Below are positions 35,624 through 48,413 of a stretch of DNA of 64,000 nucleotides, one piece after another. The position numbers and the translations under genes are program-made. Position 1 is the stretch's first letter; every line of letters starts with the position of its first letter. The notes beneath the pieces are model-generated. The model saw only the letters and a list, made by a program, of their open reading frames with translations. It made no database searches and was not told where the DNA came from. The DNA is from Ophelia neglecta (Eukaryota): positions 65,534,001 to 65,598,000 of the forward strand of contig OZ260666.1 of the NCBI GenBank assembly GCA_965285935.1. Reading direction: 5' to 3'.

Positions 35624-37147
35624 CCACTGCTAGGTTAATACTGTATGCCAAGGTAATATTAACATTGTGCATATAATATACCACTACGTTTCTGACCACC
35701 TTATTCCATTTGTAACTTAGTCAGTTTGAACATTTTCTCATATTTGTGTGCAGCATACATCATTTGCATTGAATAGAAAATTGTATTATTAAGTTACATG
35801 GTGGGCAGAAATGTTTAAATAATGAATATATAGGTGTAATAATTTGTACTGGCAAAGTTTGGCATATGGCTGAAGTCAGTGTACTAGACAACTGCACTCC
35901 CTTTGAGGCAGTGATTAGGGGTTTCAGGAAACGATACCATTTATATGTTAAAAAGTGTTGCATATCACACTGATGGCTTAAGTGATTGTTATAATGTATT
36001 GTTATTGTTATAACAATTTATGTTTGTGTTATATGCCTGTGTGCATTTAGTGCTTCCTCTCCCCCCCCCCCCCCCCGCCCCACACACACACCAAAAAAGT
36101 CATAATTTAATTTGCATATTAAATGCAACTGAGGTGTATAATATTGCCAACATCTACAAACATTCAGGGTATGAAAATTGGCATTATTGCAAATAGAGTA
36201 AATTTTATGATTGCTTGAGCTGTAAAATTAAAAAAAAAACCTAATTAATAGTACATATGTTAATTACCTTTTTTTCAGCATTTTTATTATCCTTTTCAGT
36301 TGTTGCAAAGACAAAATCAAATACAATATTTTGTGTATGGGTTAGACCTGGGCTTATTGATCTAGCTTATTGATGAAGATGTGACCATAATATCCATAGC
36401 GGAGAAGATCGGAGTACCTCCAATATCAGTAGCATAACAGAGTAAAAGTCCAGTCCAATTAACGACAATGTGTTAAGAGTTGTTAAAATTTACTTGCATT
36501 CTTTTATGTATATTATCTTTAACATATCATTGTATTGTGTCTATGTTGAACATATATATATTGAGCTGGAAGGCACCAGACTACTGAGTAGGAGAGAACC
36601 AGATGAAAGTGTATGTACATACTGGACACACTTTTGTGTTACAAGTTTGGGATTTGTAATTAGATTGAGCACACTTCTTTGGGATAAAATGTCCACCATA
36701 CGAAAAGTGACTGTATTCGGTTCCGGTTGTATAGTGTGGATGCAGAATGAAATCTAATTTAGACTTACATAAGAAGAAAATTTTTAACTACAATTGTTTT
36801 TAAACCCTCCATGATTTACCTTGGAGATAGCAAAAATATCAGTTCATGGAATGTTAAGTGCTATGCTATCTTTTATATTTCCCTCTTGGCACAAACTTTC
36901 AGCTCGGATGCAATTTTAAAAGTCACAATTTGGGAAAACAGTCATGTTTCCCTAAACAGTTAGTCCTGAGTAACTAAGGTGTTAATACCAAAGCTTGTCC
37001 ACTAATCAGCAATTGTGTAGCCCAGTGTACTGGTATATTTGTTAGTCATTGGTCCAACTTCAGTGGCATTTCAAAACTTGTAATCTGTTGTTATCTATAT
37101 TCTGACTGCTTACTGGGTATCACTTATATATCTGTACCTGTTGATAC

Positions 37148-37153
37148 AATAAA
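37148..37153 (+). terminator. Candidate polyadenylation signal AATAAA for TMEM183
   Basis: AATAAA about 1.5 kb downstream of the stop, after a U-rich stretch resembling a 3' UTR. Confidence 0.4.
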
Positions 37154-38273
37154 CGTTTACAATTGTGGCCATCTTGTACGTTGAATTCAGCAGAAATACA
37201 AAACCATCTGAGCTGTTCACATCCATTAGAGGCTCATCAAATTTGATAAACATACTTTAAAAAAAAATTTTGTAATATGCTATTAAGGTCTGACATAAGG
37301 GCCATTTAGTTTGAACACCATATTTTAATTTAAATTCACCAGACAAGATGCAGTGTGGTAGGAGGGCAAAGGATGGCAACCTGGAAAACTCCTATTCCCT
37401 GAAGTAGTTTTGTATGCACAAATATACTTTGATCACTAGTTATAGAGTAGCTCTTTTTAAAAGATTTGCGGGAGCATATCTCTTCGGAGCTATCGCACCT
37501 TGGTAAATGCATCTTTGGAATGACTAAAAAAAAATTAATTCCGCCAAAGTTTATTCGCTGCTAGACTACCAAAGAGTATGTTCATGTAGATCTATTATTA
37601 CCAAAGATTCCTACCAGTATTGAATAGAATGAGCGGGAAGCAAAAGGCAGTAGTGGCAGAATGAATATAATGCTTTGTAAATAGGCAAGAATTCATTATG
37701 AAAGTACATGTAGTGCTCAAAATTTTATAAAATAAGTTTGATAATAAACCTTATGTGCAAAAATGTCCTAACAGGACATGTTGTTTTATTATCAATGCTG
37801 CCAATTCGTATACTCAATAATTAGGCAAATATATTGATCTGAAATACAGTTCTGCAATTGTCACCACAATCCAACATGAACTGGCAAGTTCATAACAAAT
37901 ATTAGCCTTTCATGATACCAGGTCCGTTAATGAATGAGCAAGAGTGGCAAATCATTATGGAAGTAAAATTTGCGCATTCAATTCATGTTCTTACTGGTAC
38001 GAATCGTGTGCAGGTATTAGTTTTGTGACCTTGTTCTTAGTTTTTTGGCACATGTTCTAGAAGAAGGATGCAACCATTTAAAGATCTTTGTTTTCTTAAG
38101 AGATTGTTTTGAAAATTACAACACTGAAACCAATTGGTGAAAAACGATCTTTTATTGTCTTTAGATATAAAGATTATTTTTAAATGCAAGTCTCTCGAGT
38201 ATTCATGAAATTTTTAATTAATTGCATAATTGTACAGAAATGCAAAACAAGTTTAAAATTGTTAGATTAAGTA

Positions 38274-38452
38274 CAGTGGTCCCTGCAATGTGAGGCCACA
38301 CCTTATTCCAAGTAATAGTGGCCCTTCATATCCAGGTGGCCCCCCATCGGAAGTAATTTAACATGATAAGTCAGGACATGGGAATTTCAAAACTGTCCTG
38401 CCATTGAAGGGGGGATCTTCATTGGAGGGGCCCTACATCCCAGAGACCAATG
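38274..38452. mobile_element. Tc1/mariner-pogo-type MITE (~180 bp) with TA target duplication
   Basis: TA|CAGTGGTCCCTGCAATGTGAGGCC ... GGCCCTACATCCCAGAGACCAATG|TA; imperfect 24-bp TIRs flanked by TA. Confidence 0.7.
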
Positions 38453-38483
38453 TAAACTATTAAAGAATATTATGTTCTAATTT

Positions 38484-38653
38484 TCATAATTTTTTATTGA
38501 GATCAATTAAATCTCCTGTGGTTGGAATTCCTTCTGTGTCTAGCAGTTCCCAGTCTGGTGTTGGTGCTGTGGCATAGGGAGCTGTTGTGGGCACATTGTA
38601 CATTGGTTGATAGTACGGTGGCACTCCTGTCTGGCTGGAGTATGCTGGGTACC
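38484..38653 (-). CDS. Uncharacterised 203-aa Pro/Tyr-rich protein, exon 4 (GYPAYSSQTGVPPYYQPMYNVPTTAPYATAPTPDWELLDTEGIPTTGDLIDLNKKL*)
   Basis: TTCTCTCATATCAACAG acceptor at 38654; phase 1 continues exon 3; composition continuous with exon 3; TGA at 38486-38484. This frame is absent from the ORF track. Confidence 0.8.
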
Positions 38654-38841
38654 CTGTTGATATGAGAGAACATTAACATCAAGGAACCACTGACTGTAAG
38701 TGTAAAGGTGAAAATCTTCACGCATGATGAAATTTTAGGCTTTTGCAAATTCCTGGTCACAGAAAAATTCCAGGTCATGGAAAATTTCTGGTTTACTGTA
38801 GATGGGAGATCTTACTTTACAACATTGTATAAACCACCCAC

Positions 38842-39097
38842 CTTGCTGTACATTAGGCTGGTACACTGGGGGCTGCATCCCCGTTGGATATGTTGGTCGC
38901 ATTCCTGGTGGATACGCTGGCTGCATCCCAGGAGGATAGACTGGTACCATGCCCTGAGGTGTCTGGTAGGGCATCGGCTGTACCACAGGCTGGGCAGCGG
39001 CATACACTGGTTGACCAATTTGTGGTATTTGTGATGTTTCACTACCAGTAGAAACATTTACATTTATTACCTGGGGATCCTTTTCATATTCTTTTTC
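38842..39097 (-). CDS. Uncharacterised 203-aa Pro/Tyr-rich protein, exon 3 (EKEYEKDPQVINVNV...QPVYAAAQPVVQPMPYQTPQGMVPVYPPGMQPAYPPGMRPTYPTGMQPPVYQPNVQQ)
   Basis: TTTTGCCAG acceptor at 39098; AAG|GTGGGT donor at 38842/38841; strongly biased P/Q/Y/M coding with YPPGM repeats. Confidence 0.85.
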
Positions 39098-39493
39098 CTG
39101 GCAAAAATTATAAGAAATATATCTATAAAAAGAAGTCCACAATTTTGAATTGCATACTGTCACTGGATTACAAAAAAGTAGTGTGCCAAGGGCCTTCCTG
39201 TTAAAAGCATGAAAATGTCAAGTACAGAAAAGATGATTTCTGACACAAGCAGTTGAGCACTGAATGAGCGACTGACAATTGGAACTGCCTTTGGCTTCAA
39301 TCTTGCATTTATATTTATATGTTTTATATCAAGTGGGGCTTACTTCTCCAATCACTATCACTCCAATCACTATCACTCCATTCATAAAACTTGCCTAAGT
39401 TTTGAAGACTGATGTAGCTAGAATACATCAGTACATTACCATACAGTTATCGCAGTTTATTATAGAGATTTTGAATACCTGAATTTCTCTTAC

Positions 39494-39670
39494 CTGTACT
39501 ATGATAGTTGGTTCAGAGGGTTGAGATGCAATTGATCCAACTGCAGCACCCACTACGGCTGCTGTAGCTATGGTAGCGAATGGCGCTGGACGAAATATAG
39601 GTCTGCGAGTTACTACTACACGCCTGCCACCACCCATCCCAAAGCCACCACCAAAACCTCCTCTCCTTCC
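39494..39670 (-). CDS. Uncharacterised 203-aa Pro/Tyr-rich protein, exon 2 (GRRGGFGGGFGMGGGRRVVVTRRPIFRPAPFATIATAAVVGAAVGSIASQPSEPTIIVQ)
   Basis: CTTGCTCTAG acceptor at 39671; CAG|GTAAGA donor at 39494/39493; 177 nt, phase 0/0. Confidence 0.85.
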
Positions 39671-39905
39671 CTAGAGCAAGATAAAGGTAGCTAATTGATA
39701 TTTCAAATTAAATCATATGTCTCAATAATGTCAAATGTGTTATTCTCATGGAGAAAAACCTGCATACAAGCAGGACATATGACTACTGTGGAAATAAATG
39801 TTGTTCAGTAATTATGCATACAGTTATTATTTGAGAAATGAGGTGTATTTCATAAGTTTGAACACAAGTAGTTATAAGAAAATATTTAATAAAAATCAAA
39901 CTTAC

Positions 39906-39914
39906 CATAGGCAT
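39906..39914 (-). CDS. Uncharacterised 203-aa Pro/Tyr-rich protein, exon 1 coding part (MPM)
   Basis: ATG CCT ATG|GTAAGT perfect phase-0 donor; TATA box about 90 bp upstream. Confidence 0.7.
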
Positions 39915-40001
39915 ATTGTGATTCAATAAAATCCAAATTAAACACACAAATCTGTGGATGACGTCTCTCTTAGTATATTGCCTGGTTATGATAATCTATT
40001 T

Positions 40002-40008
40002 ATTTATA
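40002..40008 (-). promoter_or_regulatory. TATA box (TATAAAT) of the 203-aa gene, flanked by CRE-like TGACGT sites (~39959 and ~40027)
   Basis: GATTATAAATAAA on the minus strand ~90 bp upstream of the ATG at 39914; TGACGTCT and TGACGTGT nearby. Confidence 0.55.
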
Positions 40009-40810
40009 ATCAGGAGTAACTGAGCATGACGTGTTATGATACTTAGGTGCATGCTGGTAGCATGTGATGTGGCATCACTTCTGGCTTTGAATTGTTGTAA
40101 AACTATTTTATCTGAATTAGCATTGCATGGTGATGAAAGGTAATAGGGGTATATTGACAACACAGGTAGCAACCATTAAGGACATGTTTTTAACTGCAAT
40201 AATCCAAATCTTCAGTTATATAAATCTATATATATATACTTAGTTTGTGATATATAAACTGATAGAAATGAATTGGTAGTATAAGTAAAAGAATATCCTT
40301 AAGCTGCTGAAACAATTTATTACAAATGATAATAAACATTACAATATAGACTTAAATACAACAATCCTGACATACTTTACTATATAATATAAAGGATTAA
40401 ATTAAATTCATATAGAAATACTTATATACTTTAAATATGGATTATATCAGCAATCATTTTCCTAAATAAATATCTTATTTTAGATGTGTGTTATGGAGAC
40501 TTTTAAAATAAGTAAATCCGTCAAATTGACTTCACATAAATCATCAGATTGGGGGGGAGAGGGGTGCTTTTACTAGCAGTTAAAGGATAAAATGAAGTAT
40601 GCAAGTAGACAGTCGTTGTACATTAGCTTACAAAACAAAAGGCGATTAGCGTGCTAGACAGTTAGAAAAATAGGTGTACGAAAGTCCCAATTTCAAATGT
40701 TCATAAAACATTATTTGCTGACAAATATTACAGAGATTATGGAAAATTACATCCAAATGTGTCCATATTGTTCAATGATGATACATAAGAATGTAGCTAT
40801 CAATTTTACG

Positions 40811-43183
40811 TTAATAATGTATAACATGGGATGAAAATTCGTGCACATTTCGGCAGACTTTCCCACACAGGTTACACTGCCAGGGATTGTTGAGATTATG
40901 AAGTCCCATGTGTAAGTAGTACACAGTTTGATCCGTGTAGATAATCTTACAAAATTTACACATTGACAGACACTCAATGTTGGACAAAACATAATCGACA
41001 ATGTCAGCGTCTTTCACGTCTTCGTGCGTCTGCAGGTTAGATGGCCTTGGAGAACTCTGAGTGGGAGTAGTATGCTCAGGAGAATTTTGTTCCTGTCTAG
41101 ATGTAACCTGAGGTGACCCCTGTTGGCCATGTGGGGAGATCAGGGGCCTGGTGACACCTGGTGACACAGACAGCCTTTGCCGGACTGTTGATCCTACAGT
41201 GTTACTCTGTCCAGCCTCGTCTAGCCACGTGTTGTCTGATGGCTCCGGAGACTGAGTGTTAGGTAGTACTCTAGCGGCTGCTAGTGGCTTCCTGCGAGAT
41301 CGTCTGCCCTGTAAACCAACTTGCAAAGATCCACATCCCAGTGAATCAGAGTGAGACTCTAAGTCCCCAGTGGAATGGGGTCTCTCTAGGGGGTCTGTAG
41401 CACTAAATGTTTTGACTTCTAAAACTGATGAAGGCCTAACTGCACTTCTACTGCTAGTTGTAATCTGAGGGTTGTGCATGAACATATGACTTAGATATTG
41501 TGTTTCTTGTACAGTTGTGAAACCACAAATCTGGCAACAGTGCTTTTTATTGTCTTTTGCAGACTGCTTGGTTAAGTGATACTGACTTCTGAGGTGACAT
41601 CTCAAGGCATAATTATCTAAAAATACCATATCGCACAGGCTACAGTTAGTCACTGGCTTACATTCTAATTCATGTTCCGCAAATTTCACTCTGTCAAAAT
41701 ATTTTTTGCAAATGTTGCATACACTCTTTTCATTTTGTTCATCATGGTTTAATTTTCTCATTTTTTCCAGTGCCTGCACACTAGCATCACCGACAGAATG
41801 GCTCCGTTTAATCCCTGCTTCTCTTTGGGTACAGTCTAAGCTTTTCCTTGTAGGTTCTGAATGGGCAGTGGATTTTCTCTGAATATGTTTATCAATGAAA
41901 TGCATGGCATATTCATCCCGTGTATCGAAAGAGATATCACACTTAATGCAGCAGGTTTCTGGTTGTTTCTGACCCAGCTGTTGAACTGGAAGTGGAGCTG
42001 AACTTGGACGAACTCTGGTCGAAACATTCTTAAGCACCCTAAGTGTGCTTACCTGTCCAATGTTTTTTCCCTCAGTATCATTTTTGGCATGAACCAAAGC
42101 ATGCATGGCCAAAGAATCAGAATTAGGAAAATGATCTAGACAGCGAGGACACTGATATTGAATTGGAGTCAAAGGAGGCATGGCAGAAATTCTCCTTTCT
42201 TTCTCGACATCATTTAGGGCATGTGCCATGGCATGCATTGCCAACGCATCTTGAGTTGGAAAAAAAGAACTGCACATGGTGCATTTGTAACCACTGGTAG
42301 GGATATCAAACATTGGTAAGTTAGTGTCAACAGTAGTGCCATCTAGCCTTGAGGTACTAAGGTTTAATGGAGAGACAGACTCCTTGTTTTGACCTGACAT
42401 GCTTTTCATACCATTGGTTAGTGATTGATGAATGTCCACTTTTGTCTCCAATTTGGTGCCAGTAGAATGGGGCTGAGGTAGGTGGTTAGTGATAGAATCA
42501 CAGGATTCATTCTGAGCTCTTACCATCATATGCATGGCATACGAATCCCGACTTGCAAATATGGAACGGCAATCGACACAGACAAAAATACTTTGTATTT
42601 TAACTTTCATTTCCTTATGTCTTGGGCTGTTGAGATGGGCCAGCAGTGCTCGGTAGCCTATAAAATCCAGACCGCAAACGCGACAGCCAAAGTACTGGTC
42701 ATCATTTTTGGCATGCTGCGTTTGATGTTTGACCAGAGTCTTTCCGGAAGAAAATCTTTGCAGGCATATATTACATACAAATGTTTCTCCTTTATGGTTA
42801 TGGTTTGAGATATTTAATTCACGATGTATGGTTGCCATGTGCAAACTTAAAGTTTCAGTGTTCCAAAAGTAACAGTCGCACACATAGCACACATGACTGG
42901 TGTTAAAGTGTGCCATTTTGTGCATTTGCAGTGCATCGTAGCCAGGGAATTCACACTGGCAGACTTCACAGACGGCGGTGTCAGGTGACGAATTTTGGAT
43001 TCTAGAGTATGATCTCATCCTGTAATGACCAAGGAATGGCTGACTTTGACTAACGGAAATAGAGCTGTTCTCATATTGTTCAGTGCCAGGCTCTTGTTTG
43101 ATTTTCATATTCATTATATTTGGAGTAGTATTCCCCGAGCTTGGATGACTCTCTAGGCTTTTCTGTGTGATTTGATTTTCCAT
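40811..43183 (-). CDS. C2H2 zinc-finger protein (790 aa, ~13 dispersed fingers) with C-terminal Ikaros/Hunchback-type dimerisation finger pair; single coding exon
   Basis: Long ORF with repeated CxxC...H...H motifs. The C-terminus CKFCKIIYTDQTVYYLHMGLHNLNNPWQCNLCGKVCRNVHEFSSHVIHY resembles Ikaros [31 protein letters not shown]....DRYEFSSH. First ATG is at 43183 (the track start at 43237 is GTG); CTTTTTTACAG acceptor at 43334. Confidence 0.93.
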   Translation of the reverse strand: MENQITQKSLESHPSSGNTTPNIMNMKIKQEPGTEQYENSSISVSQSQPFLGHYRMRSYSRIQNSSPDTAVCEVCQCEFPGYDALQMHKMAHFNTSHVCYVCDCYFWNTETLSLHMATIHRELNISNHNHKGETFVCNICLQRFSSGKTLVKHQTQHAKNDDQYFGCRVCGLDFIGYRALLAHLNSPRHKEMKVKIQSIFVCVDCRSIFASRDSYAMHMMVRAQNESCDSITNHLPQPHSTGTKLETKVDIHQSLTNGMKSMSGQNKESVSPLNLSTSRLDGTTVDTNLPMFDIPTSGYKCTMCSSFFPTQDALAMHAMAHALNDVEKERRISAMPPLTPIQYQCPRCLDHFPNSDSLAMHALVHAKNDTEGKNIGQVSTLRVLKNVSTRVRPSSAPLPVQQLGQKQPETCCIKCDISFDTRDEYAMHFIDKHIQRKSTAHSEPTRKSLDCTQREAGIKRSHSVGDASVQALEKMRKLNHDEQNEKSVCNICKKYFDRVKFAEHELECKPVTNCSLCDMVFLDNYALRCHLRSQYHLTKQSAKDNKKHCCQICGFTTVQETQYLSHMFMHNPQITTSSRSAVRPSSVLEVKTFSATDPLERPHSTGDLESHSDSLGCGSLQVGLQGRRSRRKPLAAARVLPNTQSPEPSDNTWLDEAGQSNTVGSTVRQRLSVSPGVTRPLISPHGQQGSPQVTSRQEQNSPEHTTPTQSSPRPSNLQTHEDVKDADIVDYVLSNIECLSMCKFCKIIYTDQTVYYLHMGLHNLNNPWQCNLCGKVCRNVHEFSSHVIHY

Positions 43184-44614
43184 TTTTGAAGACTTCAAAA
43201 AGACTGATTTTTCTTGGGTCTTATTTGCTGTGTACACTGGAGATCAAAGGGTCGCAGTATTCTAGACTCTTCAGCAGTTTAGCTGTTTAGTTCATTACGG
43301 CATCCATAGATGAACATTTCTTATGATGCCCGTCTGTAAAAAAGAGAAGTCTTTTTAAAGTATTGGTAAACATGACCTAAGCTGGAACTACTAAACTGGA
43401 GTTTGGTTGTTCCAGACCTAAGGCAATATTATGCAAAGTGATAAGAGTACAATATTCTCTGTAAAAAAAAAGCCTTGTGTTCTCAATAAAGGCTCTTGTT
43501 CGGTGTCTGGAGGCATGACAGGCTGCCGAATGTCTGACCTACTTGTGGCCTGGAACCAAGAACCTCTCCCCCCTATTTGTTTAGTACATTCACACAAAAG
43601 AAGTGTAAGAACAGATGTCATATTGCCTCTCAAGGATGTGCCATTAAAGCCGCTGAGGTTCAGAAAAGCAATGAAAGGTATTAGGTAAACTGAGAAAAAA
43701 GTGCCCTAGCATTCTGTTATAGAGTTGATAATTTGAGGCAATGAGGCAAAGTTTATAGATGGTATGGATCCATAACATAAATTTGTCTCGCATTTGGAAT
43801 GTGTTCCAGGAATTGTTTTCGGCAATAATCAACTAGAAATAATGCGATCTGTGTACATCAGAAGTGGTCATTAAACAACCAAACAGAAAAGCCTATCTAT
43901 TAATATCGCTGTCAGATAGGTTTCCATGGGGTAAATTAGGTTGCTGTTTTAGGTTTGCAGATGCTTTCGCAGAAAGTGAGACCTGGGCCTATTTCTGGAC
44001 CCACGAAAGGTGGTTTCAGAGGGCTGGTCTACAATCGCGTGGCTGGGCATAGGTCAGCCTTGGAAAATTAGCCCTCCCCCCCCCCCTTCCTGATATCCTG
44101 GATCTGCCACACTAGAACATACAGAATAAAATTATGAAAACTTTATGAAAGCTATCACACCCACTATCTATTTTCACAGCAGCATGTCCCTGCCAATATA
44201 AGAGGCTTAACAAAAGGCTTTGGACAACCTTGGTGCAAAGCAGTAGGGTTAGGTAGTGTGATGTAGTGTTTTGCAGTGCAAGTAGGGTTGAAGTCCTGCT
44301 GAAGTGCTGCACCACACTACTATATACTGGTTATCACTGATGTTGCCTGATGCCATAATTCTTAAATAGAAGTCCTCCAAACAGCCCCAGCTGGGGCTAG
44401 CATAGGAATGGGTGCATGTGTAAGTGAATATGGTGACCAAGGTGGACACCTTTGTAGAAACAGGGTTTCTTAGAGGTGCAGGTCACACCCAGTATGAACA
44501 AGACCCTAGACATATGGGCCACCAACCCCACCACCCCCCAACGGAAGCATACTGACCTCCTCTCCATACACCACAGCCATGCATGCACATGCCCCCCCAC
44601 ATACAGCAAATGCA

Positions 44615-45713: not shown

Positions 45714-46231
45714 GTACTGTGTCTCACTCAAACTGAGTATAAGCTTTGGGATGACCTAATAGGTAAATGTCAGCTTGCAATAACTATATAAATACTTTAA
45801 GCTGTCTATGAAAAAGCCTCTTCAATGCTATCCTAAACGTTTTCTTTACCATTCATGTGCTTAATTTCACTATCGATTTCCACACCAACAAAGGAGCTAA
45901 AAGCGACTCTTTCCTGCCGGAAGCAGTAGTTTGATGAGCGGCACCAAATATTGAACCGCAGAAAGAATGGTTACACCATGAATATAATTAGCCAATAAAT
46001 GTATCTACCGTTATAATTTTCAGCTTGATTTAAATTTAAACAGTGTTTGTAAAATAAAAATTTAGACCTTAAAAGTCGAAGAATAATATTTGGCGAAAAT
46101 TCCTCTTCAAATTTTACAGCCAGGCCTGCAGATTGTGAATAGCAGGTTTAGGCTCGTCATGAAACTGGTGCACGAGCGATAATACACACTTGAAATATCG
46201 GGAAACTAGCAGGCGACAGATGTTGGTGACA

Positions 46232-46267
46232 ATGGAAAAGAAAATAGCCAGAAACTTTAATGAAAAA
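46232..46267 (+). CDS. USH1C: Harmonin, first coding exon (MEKKIARNFNEK; an in-frame ATG at 46220 would add MLVT)
   Basis: Aligns to human MDRKVAREFRHK; AAA|GTGAGT phase-0 donor. Confidence 0.88.
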
Positions 46268-48413
46268 GTGAGTTCATGAATATAATTTGACTTATGTTGT
46301 TGTGTAGATAGCATTTCACATCACCAGAAAGAAAAATTGCCATTATATCAGCTTTTCGCATAAGATTTACAAATATATTGACGATCAGGTGACAATGTAC
46401 ACACTGATACAGTGCATATGTGCTACGAGGTGGTTTCAGGGCGTGTAAAATCGATTTATGCTATCGACTGTATGAAATGTTAACGATATTCATCCCTTGC
46501 TTTTGATGCCAGTGATGGCCAAATACGATACAACTTGATTTTTATGATTGAATGTATCAAATTGTCCAAGTGGAAGCCATTTAATATTGACTACAGTATC
46601 TGAAAAAAAATGTGCTTGGTTTCAGGAAGTAATTTTTTCACTGCCTGCATTTAACGTTGTATGAAGTGCACTTTCTTTTTGCCTTGTAACTGTATTTCAT
46701 ATGCAGTCCTATCCTCAGATTAAGTAGAAAGTAGAAGTTTTAATATTAAAATTATGTACATTAATTGCCAAAATAAATGACCTCAGTTATTTAAAAGAGG
46801 TTTCCATGCAAATCATTTGCATTTTGATAGCATCGACAATTTAAGATAATGCTTTTAGCAATTGATTGAGTTAATTTTAACTTCACATTCTCATCTATTG
46901 TTGTATTAAATACATGTTTTTTCCTTCCTCTCACTTCTAAACATTCTAAATAATACAGCACACTATTCAACACAAATAAATTTAACACTTGCAGGATAAA
47001 GCACACACATAATCAATCTTCGGCACTACAGATAAATTAGGGGTTGTTAAAATGCACTAGGAACTAATCAACAAAACACTTTGGTTACAAAGGGTTCCTT
47101 TCCTGTGGGATTGCTGTATACATTGAAATAGGTGTCAAGTTGCGAGGGTTGAGCCATGCTGTATCACATTTAGAGATTGTCCAGGCAGTGGATACTGAAG
47201 CCCTGCACATGGCCTATCAGATATCACTGGGTGACATTGATCTGATCATGATAAGGCACAGCCATCACACAGCTGGCCAGTTGTGTCAGAATATCCAAAC
47301 TAGTGAATAGCATCATTAGAGTGCTATACTATTTTTACTATGTGCTAGTTTATGCAAGGTATATGATACAGGGTAAGGCTTAGGACAGATTAGGATTCAA
47401 AAATATACCTTTGTTGTTTTATAGATGCATTTTTTTTATCTACTGAAAAGTTTTTTTTATGGTAGACACTTTTTTCTATGAAGCAGACCTTATAAAGCTC
47501 AGACCATAGAATGGTCACAGATAGAACATATGATTCTTATTATTCATTACATTATTACCGTTGTGCACTGTTTGTGCATTCCACTGGGGAAAATAGATTC
47601 GAACCAGATTTACCTTTTTAGGGCGAGGTTTTACGTTATAAATTTAAATAACGTTTTTATATCGATGTTAACCCTTTAATGCCTGACATTGCAAGGAGAA
47701 TAAAACATTATCGGCCAGGCACAGTGTCTCCTCTATTTCAGGGGACCCATGTTCACCCCTCTGGATGGCCATTAGTAATGTATTTTAACTAAGGGGAAAC
47801 CTTTCGCAACACAGGGTTATTTTATTCAAAATGGACAACAAACATAGGCTTTCCCCACTAAGAAAATAAGGCACAGACAAAAGAGAAGTATTGTGTTTTT
47901 TATTATAGCATTAAATATAAGGTTTAAGTGAGTAGAGTTGGTCATATTTACATTTACATATATGTGGGCAAAATGTTATTTACATCATTTAAAAGGCATT
48001 AGTAGATCTCCAAAAGTGTTTGCTTCTGAAAAAAATCTGGTAAAATTGTCCTCTGTCAATAGAATGTTCAATATTGTTGGCAGTTACGTTAGTGAAATTT
48101 CCCTGAAATGAATAATATTATTGAACTCACACTAGACTATCTGCACTCAGCGGAATAGTTTCAGTACCTAAATGATAGCAATTCTCAACTTAGAAAATTC
48201 TTGGATCATGCTTGGGCTCTAAGTCCAGTTCAATGTATCTTAGAAAAATGGCACATGAAGCTTTAAAAAAGCTGCATAAAATAATCGTATGAAATAAGAA
48301 AGTAAATACAATTTGATTGACGAAAAGTGCAGTGGTGGTCAAATGTTATTTTGTCAAGTAAAAGTTATGACTTACAGGACAAAATGTTTTCACATGGTTC
48401 TTTTTATTTCAAG

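What the first reader, a model, noticed from the sequence alone, without database searches (positions are those of the whole stretch)
38484..39914. Hidden 4-exon gene for a motif-dense 203-aa protein: Gly/Arg head, hydrophobic segment, PPxY motifs and a C-terminal LIR-like site
Seen in sequence: four exons (9, 177, 256 and 170 nt) with canonical GT-AG sites and consistent phases, under a TATA box. They join into MPM-GRRGGFGGGFGMGGGRR...-FATIATAAVVGAAVGSIA-...(YPPGM-like)x3-PPVY...PPYY...PDWELLDTE...DLIDLNKKL. Established knowledge: PPxY binds WW domains of NEDD4-family ligases, and acidic-flanked W-x-x-L is the canonical ATG8/LC3-interacting region. LIDL resembles a clathrin-box core. Inference: a disordered, possibly membrane-associated adaptor linking NEDD4-type ubiquitin ligases to autophagy or endocytic machinery. 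I recognise no named family for it, so it is the best candidate here for an undescribed system.
Basis: partly seen in the sequence, partly recalled or inferred. Interest (0 to 1): 0.8.

Follow-up and report, generated by a model that had tools for sequence, protein, structure and literature searches.

The report
Orphan disordered proline-tyrosine-rich anchored protein gene
The four-exon gene is very probably real and encodes a small, mostly unstructured protein with one membrane-type helix and no detectable relatives, but the proposed link between ubiquitin ligases and autophagy rests on short motifs that are barely above chance and that may face the wrong side of the membrane.

Summary
Observation confirmed. 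On the minus strand, exons of 9, 177, 256 and 170 nt (39914-39906, 39670-39494, 39097-38842, 38653-38484) join through three GT-AG introns into a 612-nt frame for 203 residues.

The gene looks real:
- Exons are 47-52% G+C and introns 28-37%.
- G+C by codon position is 0.62/0.52/0.34.
- The three YPxGM octapeptide repeats differ mostly at silent sites.
- Allelic contigs carry 3 silent SNPs, 3 conservative SNPs and one in-frame 3-nt deletion.
- A TATA box, a first-ATG start and poly(A) signals frame the unit.

There is no RNA evidence.

No relatives were found: not in Pfam, not in a phmmer scan of 1.84 billion proteins with exon 2, not in a word search with exon 3, not elsewhere in the 762-Mb genome, and not beside the neighbouring zinc-finger gene's relatives in six other assemblies.

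The functional reading is weak. Two PPxY motifs have p about 0.04-0.07 given the composition, and the W-x-x-L site p about 0.1-0.4. DWELL equally fits a DxxLL sorting signal. The flanking charges (+7 before the helix, net -3 after) predict that the tail lies outside the cytosol. A GABARAP docking test gave no answer.

Verdict: a probably real orphan gene of modest interest, with function and topology untested.

The parts
40001..40008 (-). TATAAATA box, 87-94 nt upstream of the start codon
   Evidence: Read. No ATG lies between it and 39914.
39906..39914 (-). Coding part of exon 1 (Met-Pro-Met), with donor ATG|GTAAGT
   Evidence: It is the first ATG after the TATA box, with A at -3. This is the least certain exon. 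Met15 in exon 2 is an alternative start.
39671..39905 (-). Intron 1 (235 nt, GT..AG, 27.7% G+C)
39494..39670 (-). Exon 2 (177 nt, residues 4-62): Gly/Arg head, hydrophobic helix and the start of the acidic linker
   Evidence: 52% G+C. Single copy in the genome.
39524..39583 (-). Residues 33-52: predicted helix with small-xxx-small (glycine-zipper) spacing T36-A40-G44-G48-S52
   Evidence: Kyte-Doolittle 19-residue maximum of 1.75 at residues 34-52. AlphaFold2 single-sequence helix at exon residues 30-48 (protein residues 33-51), pLDDT about 78-82. Weak Pfam DUF883_C glycine-zipper match, E 0.12.
39098..39493 (-). Intron 2 (396 nt, GT..AG, 34% G+C)
   Evidence: It holds 9 of the 11 intronic SNPs.
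38842..39097 (-). Exon 3 (256 nt, residues 63-148 first base): acidic linker, NVS sequon, Pro/Tyr/Gln/Met-rich region
   Evidence: Lies in a 160-codon open frame. Single copy.
38867..38938 (-). Three tandem octapeptide repeats YPPGMQPA / YPPGMRPT / YPTGMQPP (24-nt units)
   Evidence: Units 1 and 2 differ by 3 silent and 0 replacement changes within YPPGM.
38861..38872 (-). PPVY (residues 138-141), strict PPxY
38654..38841 (-). Intron 3 (188 nt, GT..AG, phase 1)
38484..38653 (-). Exon 4 (170 nt, residues 148-203 plus TGA)
   Evidence: Single copy.
38610..38621 (-). PPYY (residues 159-162), strict PPxY
38541..38555 (-). DWELL (residues 181-185): fits the W-x-x-L LIR core and equally the DxxLL pattern
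   Evidence: A silent SNP in D181 and a polymorphic in-frame loss of one codon at about residue 179 lie next to it.
38499..38510 (-). LIDL (residues 196-199), clathrin-box-like core in the acidic, Leu-rich tail
   Evidence: p about 0.001 for this single pattern, not corrected for the many motif classes one could look for.
38151..38156 (-). AATAAA, a likely poly(A) signal about 330 nt after the stop. A second one at 38493-38498 overlaps the last codons.

Best explanation
This is a real, single-copy, lineage-restricted gene. It forms a compact unit of about 1.85 kb between a ZNF423-like zinc-finger gene and the next locus. Its product is a 203-residue protein without cysteine or histidine that is disordered except for one helix (residues 33-52). 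My committed reading is a membrane-associated docking platform. A polybasic Gly/Arg head (+7 charge, no acidic residue before position 56) and the Ala/Val/Gly glycine-zipper helix hold the protein on, or in, an endomembrane and probably let it self-associate. The 150-residue Pro/Tyr/Gln/Met-rich tail would stay in the cytosol as a multivalent array of short motifs: three YPxGM octapeptide repeats, two PPxY, and an acidic Leu-rich end with DWELL and LIDL. These would recruit WW-domain (NEDD4-type) ligases and sorting or coat proteins, as the unrelated small PY-motif membrane adaptors do. Shown here: the gene structure, the coding signatures, the disorder plus helix, the single copy, and the absence of detectable relatives. 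Inferred only: membrane association, cytosolic exposure of the tail, and every binding partner. The repeats are the only motif with direct evidence of selection at the peptide level. The LIR reading is one of at least three equally good readings of DWELL.
For: Gene reality:
- Canonical strong splice sites and matching phases.
- Exons 47-52% G+C against introns 28-37%.
- Codon-position G+C of 0.62/0.52/0.34, with the third position at the non-coding background.
- YPPGM units 1 and 2 differ by 3 silent and 0 replacement changes, and the DNA repeat copies are only 71-74% identical.
- Alleles show 3 silent SNPs, 3 conservative replacements and a 3-nt in-frame deletion.
- TATA box, first ATG, and a poly(A) signal for the upstream gene at 40316 and for this gene at 38151.

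Architecture:
- Kyte-Doolittle maximum 1.75 at residues 34-52, and the flanking charges.
- Helix at protein residues 33-51 at pLDDT about 80, with coil flanks.
- The tail folds with pLDDT below 50.

Cytosol-type features (established knowledge):
- RGG/GAR-like heads and Pro/Tyr/Gly/Met-rich repeats of the Alix, TSG101 and annexin A7/A11 type are cytosolic.
- The helix is rich in Ala, Gly, Thr and Ser, which makes it a poor Sec61 signal-anchor.
- PY-motif membrane adaptors work as proposed here (CYYR1, NDFIP: PMC11399591; Comm/PRRG4: PMC5578492).
Against: There is no transcript evidence and no orthologue, so there is no conservation test of any motif. The positive-inside rule (+7 before the helix, net -3 in the 20 residues after it) predicts that a membrane-spanning helix would put the tail in the lumen or outside the cell, where none of the motifs could act. 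An NVS sequon at residue 76 and Thr/Pro-rich stretches would suit that orientation. PPxY enrichment is marginal (p 0.04-0.07) and the LIR-type site is at chance level. No homology to any PY-adaptor family was found, and the protein lacks the Cys-rich ectodomain typical of those families.
Confidence: 0.35

Rival explanations
1. It is a type II single-pass membrane protein. The Gly/Arg head stays in the cytosol, the helix spans the ER-derived membrane, and the Pro/Thr/Tyr-rich tail is lumenal or extracellular (glycosylated, mucin-like or matrix-associated). The PPxY, LIR and clathrin-box matches would then be compositional accidents.
For: The charge difference across the helix is strongly N-positive (7 Arg and no acidic residue before it, net -3 after it). 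The Kyte-Doolittle value of 1.75 passes the usual 1.6 threshold, and a confident helix is predicted. An NVS sequon lies 24 residues past the helix, and there are Thr/Pro-rich stretches (PTTAPYATAPTP). The motif counts are near chance.
Against: The anchor is rich in Ala, Gly, Thr and Ser and only marginally hydrophobic for SRP/Sec61 (own estimate from the Hessa scale, from memory, about +2.5 kcal/mol). There are no cysteines. The Tyr/Pro/Gln/Met octapeptide repeats and the acidic Leu-rich end are typical of cytosolic linear-motif regions. The Leu, Trp and acidic residues cluster in the last 23 residues.
Confidence: 0.25
2. It is a soluble low-complexity protein. The RGG-type head and the prion-like Pro/Tyr/Gln/Met repeats drive condensate or RNP association, and the Ala/Val/Gly segment is a self-association (amyloid-core-like) element rather than a membrane anchor.
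For: The GRRGGFGGGFGMGGGRR head resembles GAR/RGG boxes (own knowledge). The hydrophobic tract has the composition of the prion-protein and alpha-synuclein NAC cores. The only PDB echo of exon 2 beyond RNase T is the prion fibril core at a non-significant E of 1.5. The hydrophobicity is marginal, and the rest is disordered.
Against: Nineteen consecutive uncharged residues bracketed by prolines and predicted as one helix are more typical of an anchor. Proline-rich sequence disfavours prion-like assembly. There are only four RG/RGG dipeptide contexts.
Confidence: 0.12
3. The protein is a membrane-tethered selective-autophagy (organellophagy-type) receptor, or a NEDD4-to-ATG8 bridge, that uses W182-x-x-L185 as a functional LIR.
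For: The formal features listed for organellophagy receptors in PMC12431859 are present: a tethering helix, an IDR of 151 residues with net charge -7, and a W-x-x-L site 130 residues from the anchor with acidic neighbours. PDWELLD resembles the DDFELL LIR of FAM134B (own knowledge).
Against: The canonical core often occurs without function (PMC12582063). Chance expectation here is p 0.09-0.4. The predicted topology is wrong. No conservation data exist. The docking job gave no answer and is not counted as evidence either way.
Confidence: 0.08
4. It is not a protein-coding gene. On this reading, a chance alignment of open frames and splice-like sites lies in a locally G+C-rich stretch, or the locus is a non-coding or decayed one.
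For: There is no RNA evidence. No homologue was found anywhere. No counterpart was found at the syntenic position in relatives. The 9-nt first exon is speculative. The exon SNP density (6 in 612 nt) is not clearly below the intron density (11 in 819 nt).
Against: Codon-position periodicity with the third position at background. The repeats are conserved as peptide but diverged at silent sites. G+C steps occur exactly at three strong splice-site pairs. The polymorphic indel is in frame. The promoter and poly(A) signals are correctly placed.
Confidence: 0.15

Closest known systems
Small PY-motif membrane adaptors of NEDD4-family ligases (NDFIP1/2, CYYR1 and other Shisa-like STMC6 proteins, Commissureless/PRRG4, PMEPA1)
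   Same: They are short proteins with a hydrophobic anchor followed by a disordered Pro/Tyr-rich tail that carries several PPxY motifs. In CYYR1, pairs of PPxY motifs are needed to bind the WW domains of WWP1/2 (PMC11399591). Comm and PRRG4 use PY motifs in the same way (PMC5578492).
   Different: There is no sequence similarity (no Pfam hit). There is no signal peptide and no Cys-rich ectodomain (0 Cys). Only two strict PPxY motifs are present, at marginal enrichment. The flanking charges predict the opposite orientation.
Organellophagy receptors built as a membrane tether plus an acidic IDR plus a LIR (TEX264, SEC62, FAM134B, FUNDC1)
   Same: A membrane-tethering module, a long disordered region with net negative charge (-7 here), and an aromatic-x-x-aliphatic site far from the anchor. 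These are the features defined in PMC12431859.
   Different: The net charge is much smaller than in the tested IDRs (about -14 to -20 in the SEC62 constructs, PMC12431859). The IDR here is Pro/Tyr-rich, not acidic throughout. Cytosolic exposure is not predicted. No binding evidence exists.
Connexin-43 C-terminal tail
   Same: It is a membrane-protein tail that combines a PPxY site for NEDD4 with a LIR that binds LC3/GABARAP directly (PMC7226732).
   Different: The protein is unrelated, with four transmembrane helices and a defined channel function. In connexins the motifs are conserved across paralogues, which cannot be shown here.
DxxLL acidic-cluster dileucine signals and clathrin boxes of sorting receptors and coat adaptors (mannose-6-phosphate receptors, sortilin; amphiphysin, beta-arrestin). 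This comparison rests on own knowledge.
   Same: D181-W-E-L-L185 fits DxxLL exactly, and L196-I-D-L199 fits L[LI][DEN][LF]. Both sit in an acidic C-terminal stretch, as such signals usually do.
   Different: This is a pattern match only. The DxxLL signals of the receptors lie within a few residues of the C-terminus, and they act only on the cytosolic side.
Pro/Tyr/Gly/Met-rich regions of ESCRT- and ALG-2-linked proteins (Alix, TSG101, annexin A7/A11, PLSCR3). This comparison rests on own knowledge.
   Same: Similar composition and short tandem YP-containing repeats. The PxYPx(n)YP spacing recalls the ALG-2-binding motif type 1.
   Different: The spacing here is 6 residues, against about 3-5 in the described motif. 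There is no homology and nothing was tested.

Membership tests
Shisa-like / STMC6 PY adaptors (Shisa, WBP1, VOPP1, CYYR1) | Signal peptide and a conserved six-cysteine ectodomain before the transmembrane helix | tested here: not met
   The protein has 0 Cys in 203 residues. No Pfam match for any exon at E up to 10. The N-terminus is Gly/Arg-rich, not a signal peptide.
Shisa-like / STMC6 PY adaptors (Shisa, WBP1, VOPP1, CYYR1) | Several PPxY motifs in a cytosolic C-terminal tail | tested here: inconclusive
   Two strict PPxY motifs (138, 159), with p 0.04-0.07 against shuffles. The cytosolic location is contradicted by the flanking charges.
NDFIP (Nedd4 family interacting proteins) | Three transmembrane helices after an N-terminal PY-motif region; Pfam DUF2370 | tested here: not met
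   There is one hydrophobic segment only, the PY motifs lie C-terminal to it, and there is no Pfam hit.
Organellophagy receptor (functional class, PMC12431859) | Membrane-tethering module | tested here: inconclusive
   One helix, Kyte-Doolittle 1.75, pLDDT about 80. Its hydrophobicity is marginal, and membrane insertion cannot be tested with these tools.
Organellophagy receptor (functional class, PMC12431859) | [quoted passage not shown] | tested here: inconclusive
   The net charge of residues 53-203 is -7 and the region is disordered. Cytoplasmic exposure is not predicted by the positive-inside rule.
Organellophagy receptor (functional class, PMC12431859) | Functional LIR that engages ATG8-family proteins | tested here: inconclusive
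   The W182-x-x-L185 core with acidic flanks is present. Chance p is 0.09-0.4. The docking job with a 117-residue GABARAP (P0118) scored 0.04, which is no answer.
Glycine-zipper membrane segments (Pfam DUF883_C and similar) | Significant profile match | tested here: not met
   E 0.12 and 12.5 bits against a cut-off of 27. Only the small-xxx-small spacing is shared.

The most novel reading that the evidence does not exclude
This is a lineage-specific receptor anchored by an N-terminal basic head and a glycine-zipper helix. Its cytosolic disordered tail would couple recruitment of NEDD4-type ligases (PPxY) to ATG8 binding (DWELL) and clathrin or GGA sorting (DxxLL, LIDL). That would make it an independently evolved organelle-turnover or cargo-degradation adaptor in a lophotrochozoan, unrelated in sequence to any known one. 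A more speculative form: it is inserted like an import-arrested mitochondrial precursor, so that the tail is exposed only under stress.
Probability: 0.07. Interest if true: 0.6.

Novelty: new member of a known kind. Interest (0 to 1): 0.25.

Why it matters
If the protein is expressed and its tail faces the cytosol, it would be another independently evolved small PY-motif membrane adaptor. This class is defined by architecture rather than ancestry. It would also be a convenient case of a taxonomically restricted, fully disordered protein in which selection is visible on a repeat motif (YPxGM) with no assigned partner. Beyond that it is one of many orphan low-complexity genes in invertebrate genomes. 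It opens no long-standing question, and nothing here points to a new system.

Tried and rejected
- **Joined protein.** All searches used single exons by reference. The exons were joined only inside local scripts, read from window.fa, to check the frame and count motifs.
- **RNA evidence.** The run search listed no run on record as RNA. The three runs listed are DNA contigs of one sample and show no joints.
- **Pfam, exon by exon.** Nothing.
- **Word search.** Exon 3 was placed in its 160-codon open frame so that proteins of 88-280 residues were eligible. No candidates were found.
- **ESM Atlas.** Exons 2 and 4 gave nothing usable: bacterial glycine-rich hypotheticals at 0.89 or below.
- **phmmer of exon 2 against 1.84 billion representatives.** There was one hit at E 1.2e-4. 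It is a 1074-residue repetitive protein that matches through repeated weak segments, so I rejected it as spurious. Exons 3 and 4 could not be given the same search, because the cap is one job.
- **PDB phmmer of exons 2 and 4.** Nothing significant.
- **Own-genome search.** No paralogue for any exon.
- **Synteny.** Relatives of the upstream zinc-finger gene were found, and six loci with DNA were fetched (L013-L018). tblastn, tblastx, blastn and a Pro/Tyr composition scan found no counterpart within 2.3 to 10 kb downstream. Four further loci came without DNA. Two of these have uncharacterised 131-145-residue plus-strand ORFs about 2 kb downstream that could not be read.
- **Docking of exon 4 with GABARAP (P0118).** No verdict, so it is not evidence either way.
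- **Intronless ATG8-like ORF (L005).** Considered as a docking partner and rejected as too divergent.
- **Rfam, 37000-41000.** Nothing.
- **Alternative first exon.** An intron-1 read-through that would add a signal-peptide-like stretch was considered. I rejected it because that stretch has intron-like 28% G+C and the only in-frame donor I read there by eye (ACT|GTATGC) is weaker. No systematic scan for other donors was run.
Full report
**1. What is in the sequence**

The feature lies on the minus strand.
- Exon 1 is ATGCCTATG at 39914-39906, followed by GTAAGT.
- Exon 2 is 39670-39494 (177 nt).
- Exon 3 is 39097-38842 (256 nt).
- Exon 4 is 38653-38484 (170 nt, ending in TGA).

A local script that read the exons from window.fa confirmed 612 nt, 203 codons, one terminal stop and phases 0/0/1. 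The donors are GTAAGT, GTAAGA and GTGGGT. All three acceptors are pyrimidine-rich with AG|G.

The joined protein was assembled only inside local scripts, to check the frame and count motifs. Every such call used single exons by reference.

**2. Is it a gene?**

Several independent signatures say yes.
- Exons are 47-52% G+C, against 28-37% in the introns and flanks. The steps fall at the predicted splice sites.
- G+C by codon position is 0.62/0.52/0.34, so the third position sits at the non-coding background.
- The three 24-nt repeat units encoding YPPGMQPA, YPPGMRPT and YPTGMQPP are only 71-74% identical as DNA. Units 1 and 2 differ by three silent changes and no replacement change within YPPGM. 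The peptide, not the DNA, has been kept.
- Contigs from three DNA runs of one sample carry allelic differences:
  - three silent SNPs (S84, G135, D181);
  - three conservative replacements (V21I, R129L, T156S);
  - one 3-nt, frame-preserving deletion at about codon 179.
- TATAAATA at 40001-40008 is followed by no ATG before 39914.
- The upstream zinc-finger ORF stops at 40811 and has its own AATAAA at 40316. AATAAA signals follow this gene's stop at 38493 and 38151.

Against a real gene:
- No run on record as RNA holds the stretch, and the contigs laid show no joints.
- The SNP density in exons (6 in 612 nt) is not clearly lower than in introns (11 in 819 nt).
- The 9-nt first exon is the weakest part. 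Met15 within exon 2 is an alternative start.

I put the gene at about 85% real.

**3. The protein**

Its composition is 16% Pro, 11% Gly, 6% Tyr, with no Cys, no His and four Lys. It has five parts.
- Residues 1-33 are a Gly/Arg head with 7 Arg. The first acidic residue is at position 56.
- Residues 34-52 are the only hydrophobic stretch, with a Kyte-Doolittle 19-residue mean of 1.75. AlphaFold2 on exon 2 alone gives one helix at protein residues 33-51, pLDDT about 80, with coil flanks. The spacing T36-A40-G44-G48-S52 is a glycine-zipper pattern. Pfam gives only a sub-threshold echo (DUF883_C, E 0.12).
- Residues 53-75 are acidic (net -3).
- Residues 76-178 are neutral and rich in Pro, Tyr, Gln and Met. 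They hold the octapeptide repeats and both PPxY motifs.
- Residues 179-203 are acidic and hold 4 of the 5 leucines and the only Trp.

The tail folded with pLDDT under 50 in the docking job.

**4. Relatives**

None were found.
- Pfam, exon by exon: nothing.
- Word search with exon 3, embedded in its 160-codon open frame so that proteins of 88-280 residues were eligible: no candidates.
- ESM Atlas: nothing usable.
- phmmer of exon 2 against 1.84 billion representatives: one hit, a repetitive 1074-residue protein that I reject as spurious.
- PDB: nothing.
- Own 762-Mb genome: each exon is single copy.

I also used the neighbouring zinc-finger gene as a synteny anchor. It has a 59%-identical orthologue and many weaker relatives, including one named zinc finger protein 423 in Lingula. 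The window's own species is not in the protein collection.

Six loci around those relatives were read (L013-L018). None shows a counterpart within 2.3, 5.1, 7.8 or 10 kb downstream by tblastn, tblastx, blastn or a Pro/Tyr composition scan.

These blanks have limits:
- A 59-residue query needs about 45 bits in so large a library.
- Exon 4 could not be searched against full-length proteins.
- Downstream synteny was not established in any relative.

So "lineage-restricted" is the likely reading, not a proven one.

**5. The motifs**

I ran twenty thousand shuffles each of the whole protein and of residues 63-203.

| Pattern | Result against shuffles |
|---|---|
| Two PPxY | p = 0.04 (whole protein), 0.07 (tail) |
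| Acidic- or hydroxyl-flanked aromatic-x-x-aliphatic site | p about 0.09-0.10 |
| Looser acidic-flank LIR pattern | p about 0.39 |
| L[LI][DEN][LF] | p about 0.001, for one pattern chosen after seeing the sequence |
| Three YPxGM | 0 of 20,000 shuffles |

The repeats are therefore the only motif that is both non-random and shows peptide-level conservation. DWELL fits the W-x-x-L LIR core, but it fits the DxxLL sorting signal equally well (own knowledge). The literature stresses that canonical LIR cores often occur without function (PMC12582063).

It was found with the species' own GABARAP exon at L006. I docked exon 4 against it, and the job returned no answer, which is not evidence either way.

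**6. Topology, the crux**

The 15 residues before the helix carry +5, and the head as a whole carries +7. The 20 residues after the helix are net -3. By the positive-inside rule (established knowledge), a spanning helix would leave the head in the cytosol and put the tail in the lumen or outside the cell. PPxY, LIR, DxxLL and clathrin-box motifs cannot act there. An NVS sequon at residue 76 and Thr/Pro-rich stretches would suit that orientation.

Three points argue the other way:
- The anchor is rich in Ala, Gly, Thr and Ser, and is marginal for Sec61 insertion (my own rough estimate from the Hessa scale, from memory).
- RGG-type heads and Pro/Tyr/Gly/Met repeats are cytosolic features.
- The acidic Leu-rich end looks like a sorting signal.

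I therefore commit, at 0.35, to a membrane-associated, cytosol-facing motif platform in the manner of PY adaptors (CYYR1 and NDFIP in PMC11399591; Comm/PRRG4 in PMC5578492). The rivals are:
- a type II protein with an exoplasmic tail (0.25);
- no gene (0.15);
- a soluble low-complexity protein (0.12);
- the literal autophagy-receptor reading (0.08).

The formal features of organellophagy receptors in PMC12431859 are present on paper: a tether, a negatively charged IDR, and a LIR at least about 28 residues from the membrane. Cytosolic exposure and binding are untested.

**7. Comparison and verdict**

The protein works, at best, like the small PY-motif adaptors. It is not a member of any of their families:
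- no Cys-rich ectodomain;
- no signal peptide;
- no three-helix NDFIP core;
- no profile match.

I file it as a new member of a known, architecture-defined kind. It is a probably real orphan gene whose motif-based function is a hypothesis. Interest is modest at 0.25. The decisive experiments are transcript confirmation, a topology assay, and an orthologue search with the full spliced protein.

**8. Organism**

Other notes of this scan call the genome probably annelid (s1-740724, s1-734090). Here I can only say that the named relatives of the neighbouring gene are lophotrochozoan: Lingula, Mizuhopecten and Saccostrea.

Noticed in passing
window 38373-38449: A short element starting about 35 nt after the stop codon is covered 30-100 times more deeply than the single-copy flanks in all three DNA runs. 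This suggests a dispersed repeat inside the putative 3' UTR.
   Followed up: no
L005:1414-1839 (G000:C1:52183272-52183697): An intronless, divergent ATG8-like ORF of 141 residues. It has an insertion in the first strand region, lacks canonical N-terminal helices and ends in ...TFG. It may be a retrogene or a specialised paralogue. The canonical GABARAP and LC3 genes are split into exons elsewhere.
   Followed up: partly
window 40811-43237 (minus strand): A single 808-codon open frame of a multi-C2H2 zinc-finger gene. It has a 59%-identical orthologue in an ENA assembly, an upstream exon conserved at 46199-46270, and named relatives 'zinc finger protein 423' in Lingula. The window's own species is absent from the protein collection.
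   Followed up: partly
window 39346-39375: A perfect 15-nt tandem duplication (CTCCAATCACTATCA twice) in intron 2.
   Followed up: no
window about 39951-39958 and 40026-40033: CRE-like TGACGT cores lie on either side of the TATA box of the gene (read). No test was made.
   Followed up: no
Loci without DNA around P0133 and P0127: In two distant relatives, uncharacterised same-strand ORFs of 145 and 131 residues lie about 2 kb downstream of the zinc-finger gene. That is the relative position of exon 3's open frame here. Their sequences could not be read.
   Followed up: no
L014:19116-20057: A called 313-residue 'gene' in a relative's contig is the translation of a QSIN / SVGR microsatellite. It is not a protein.
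   Followed up: yes
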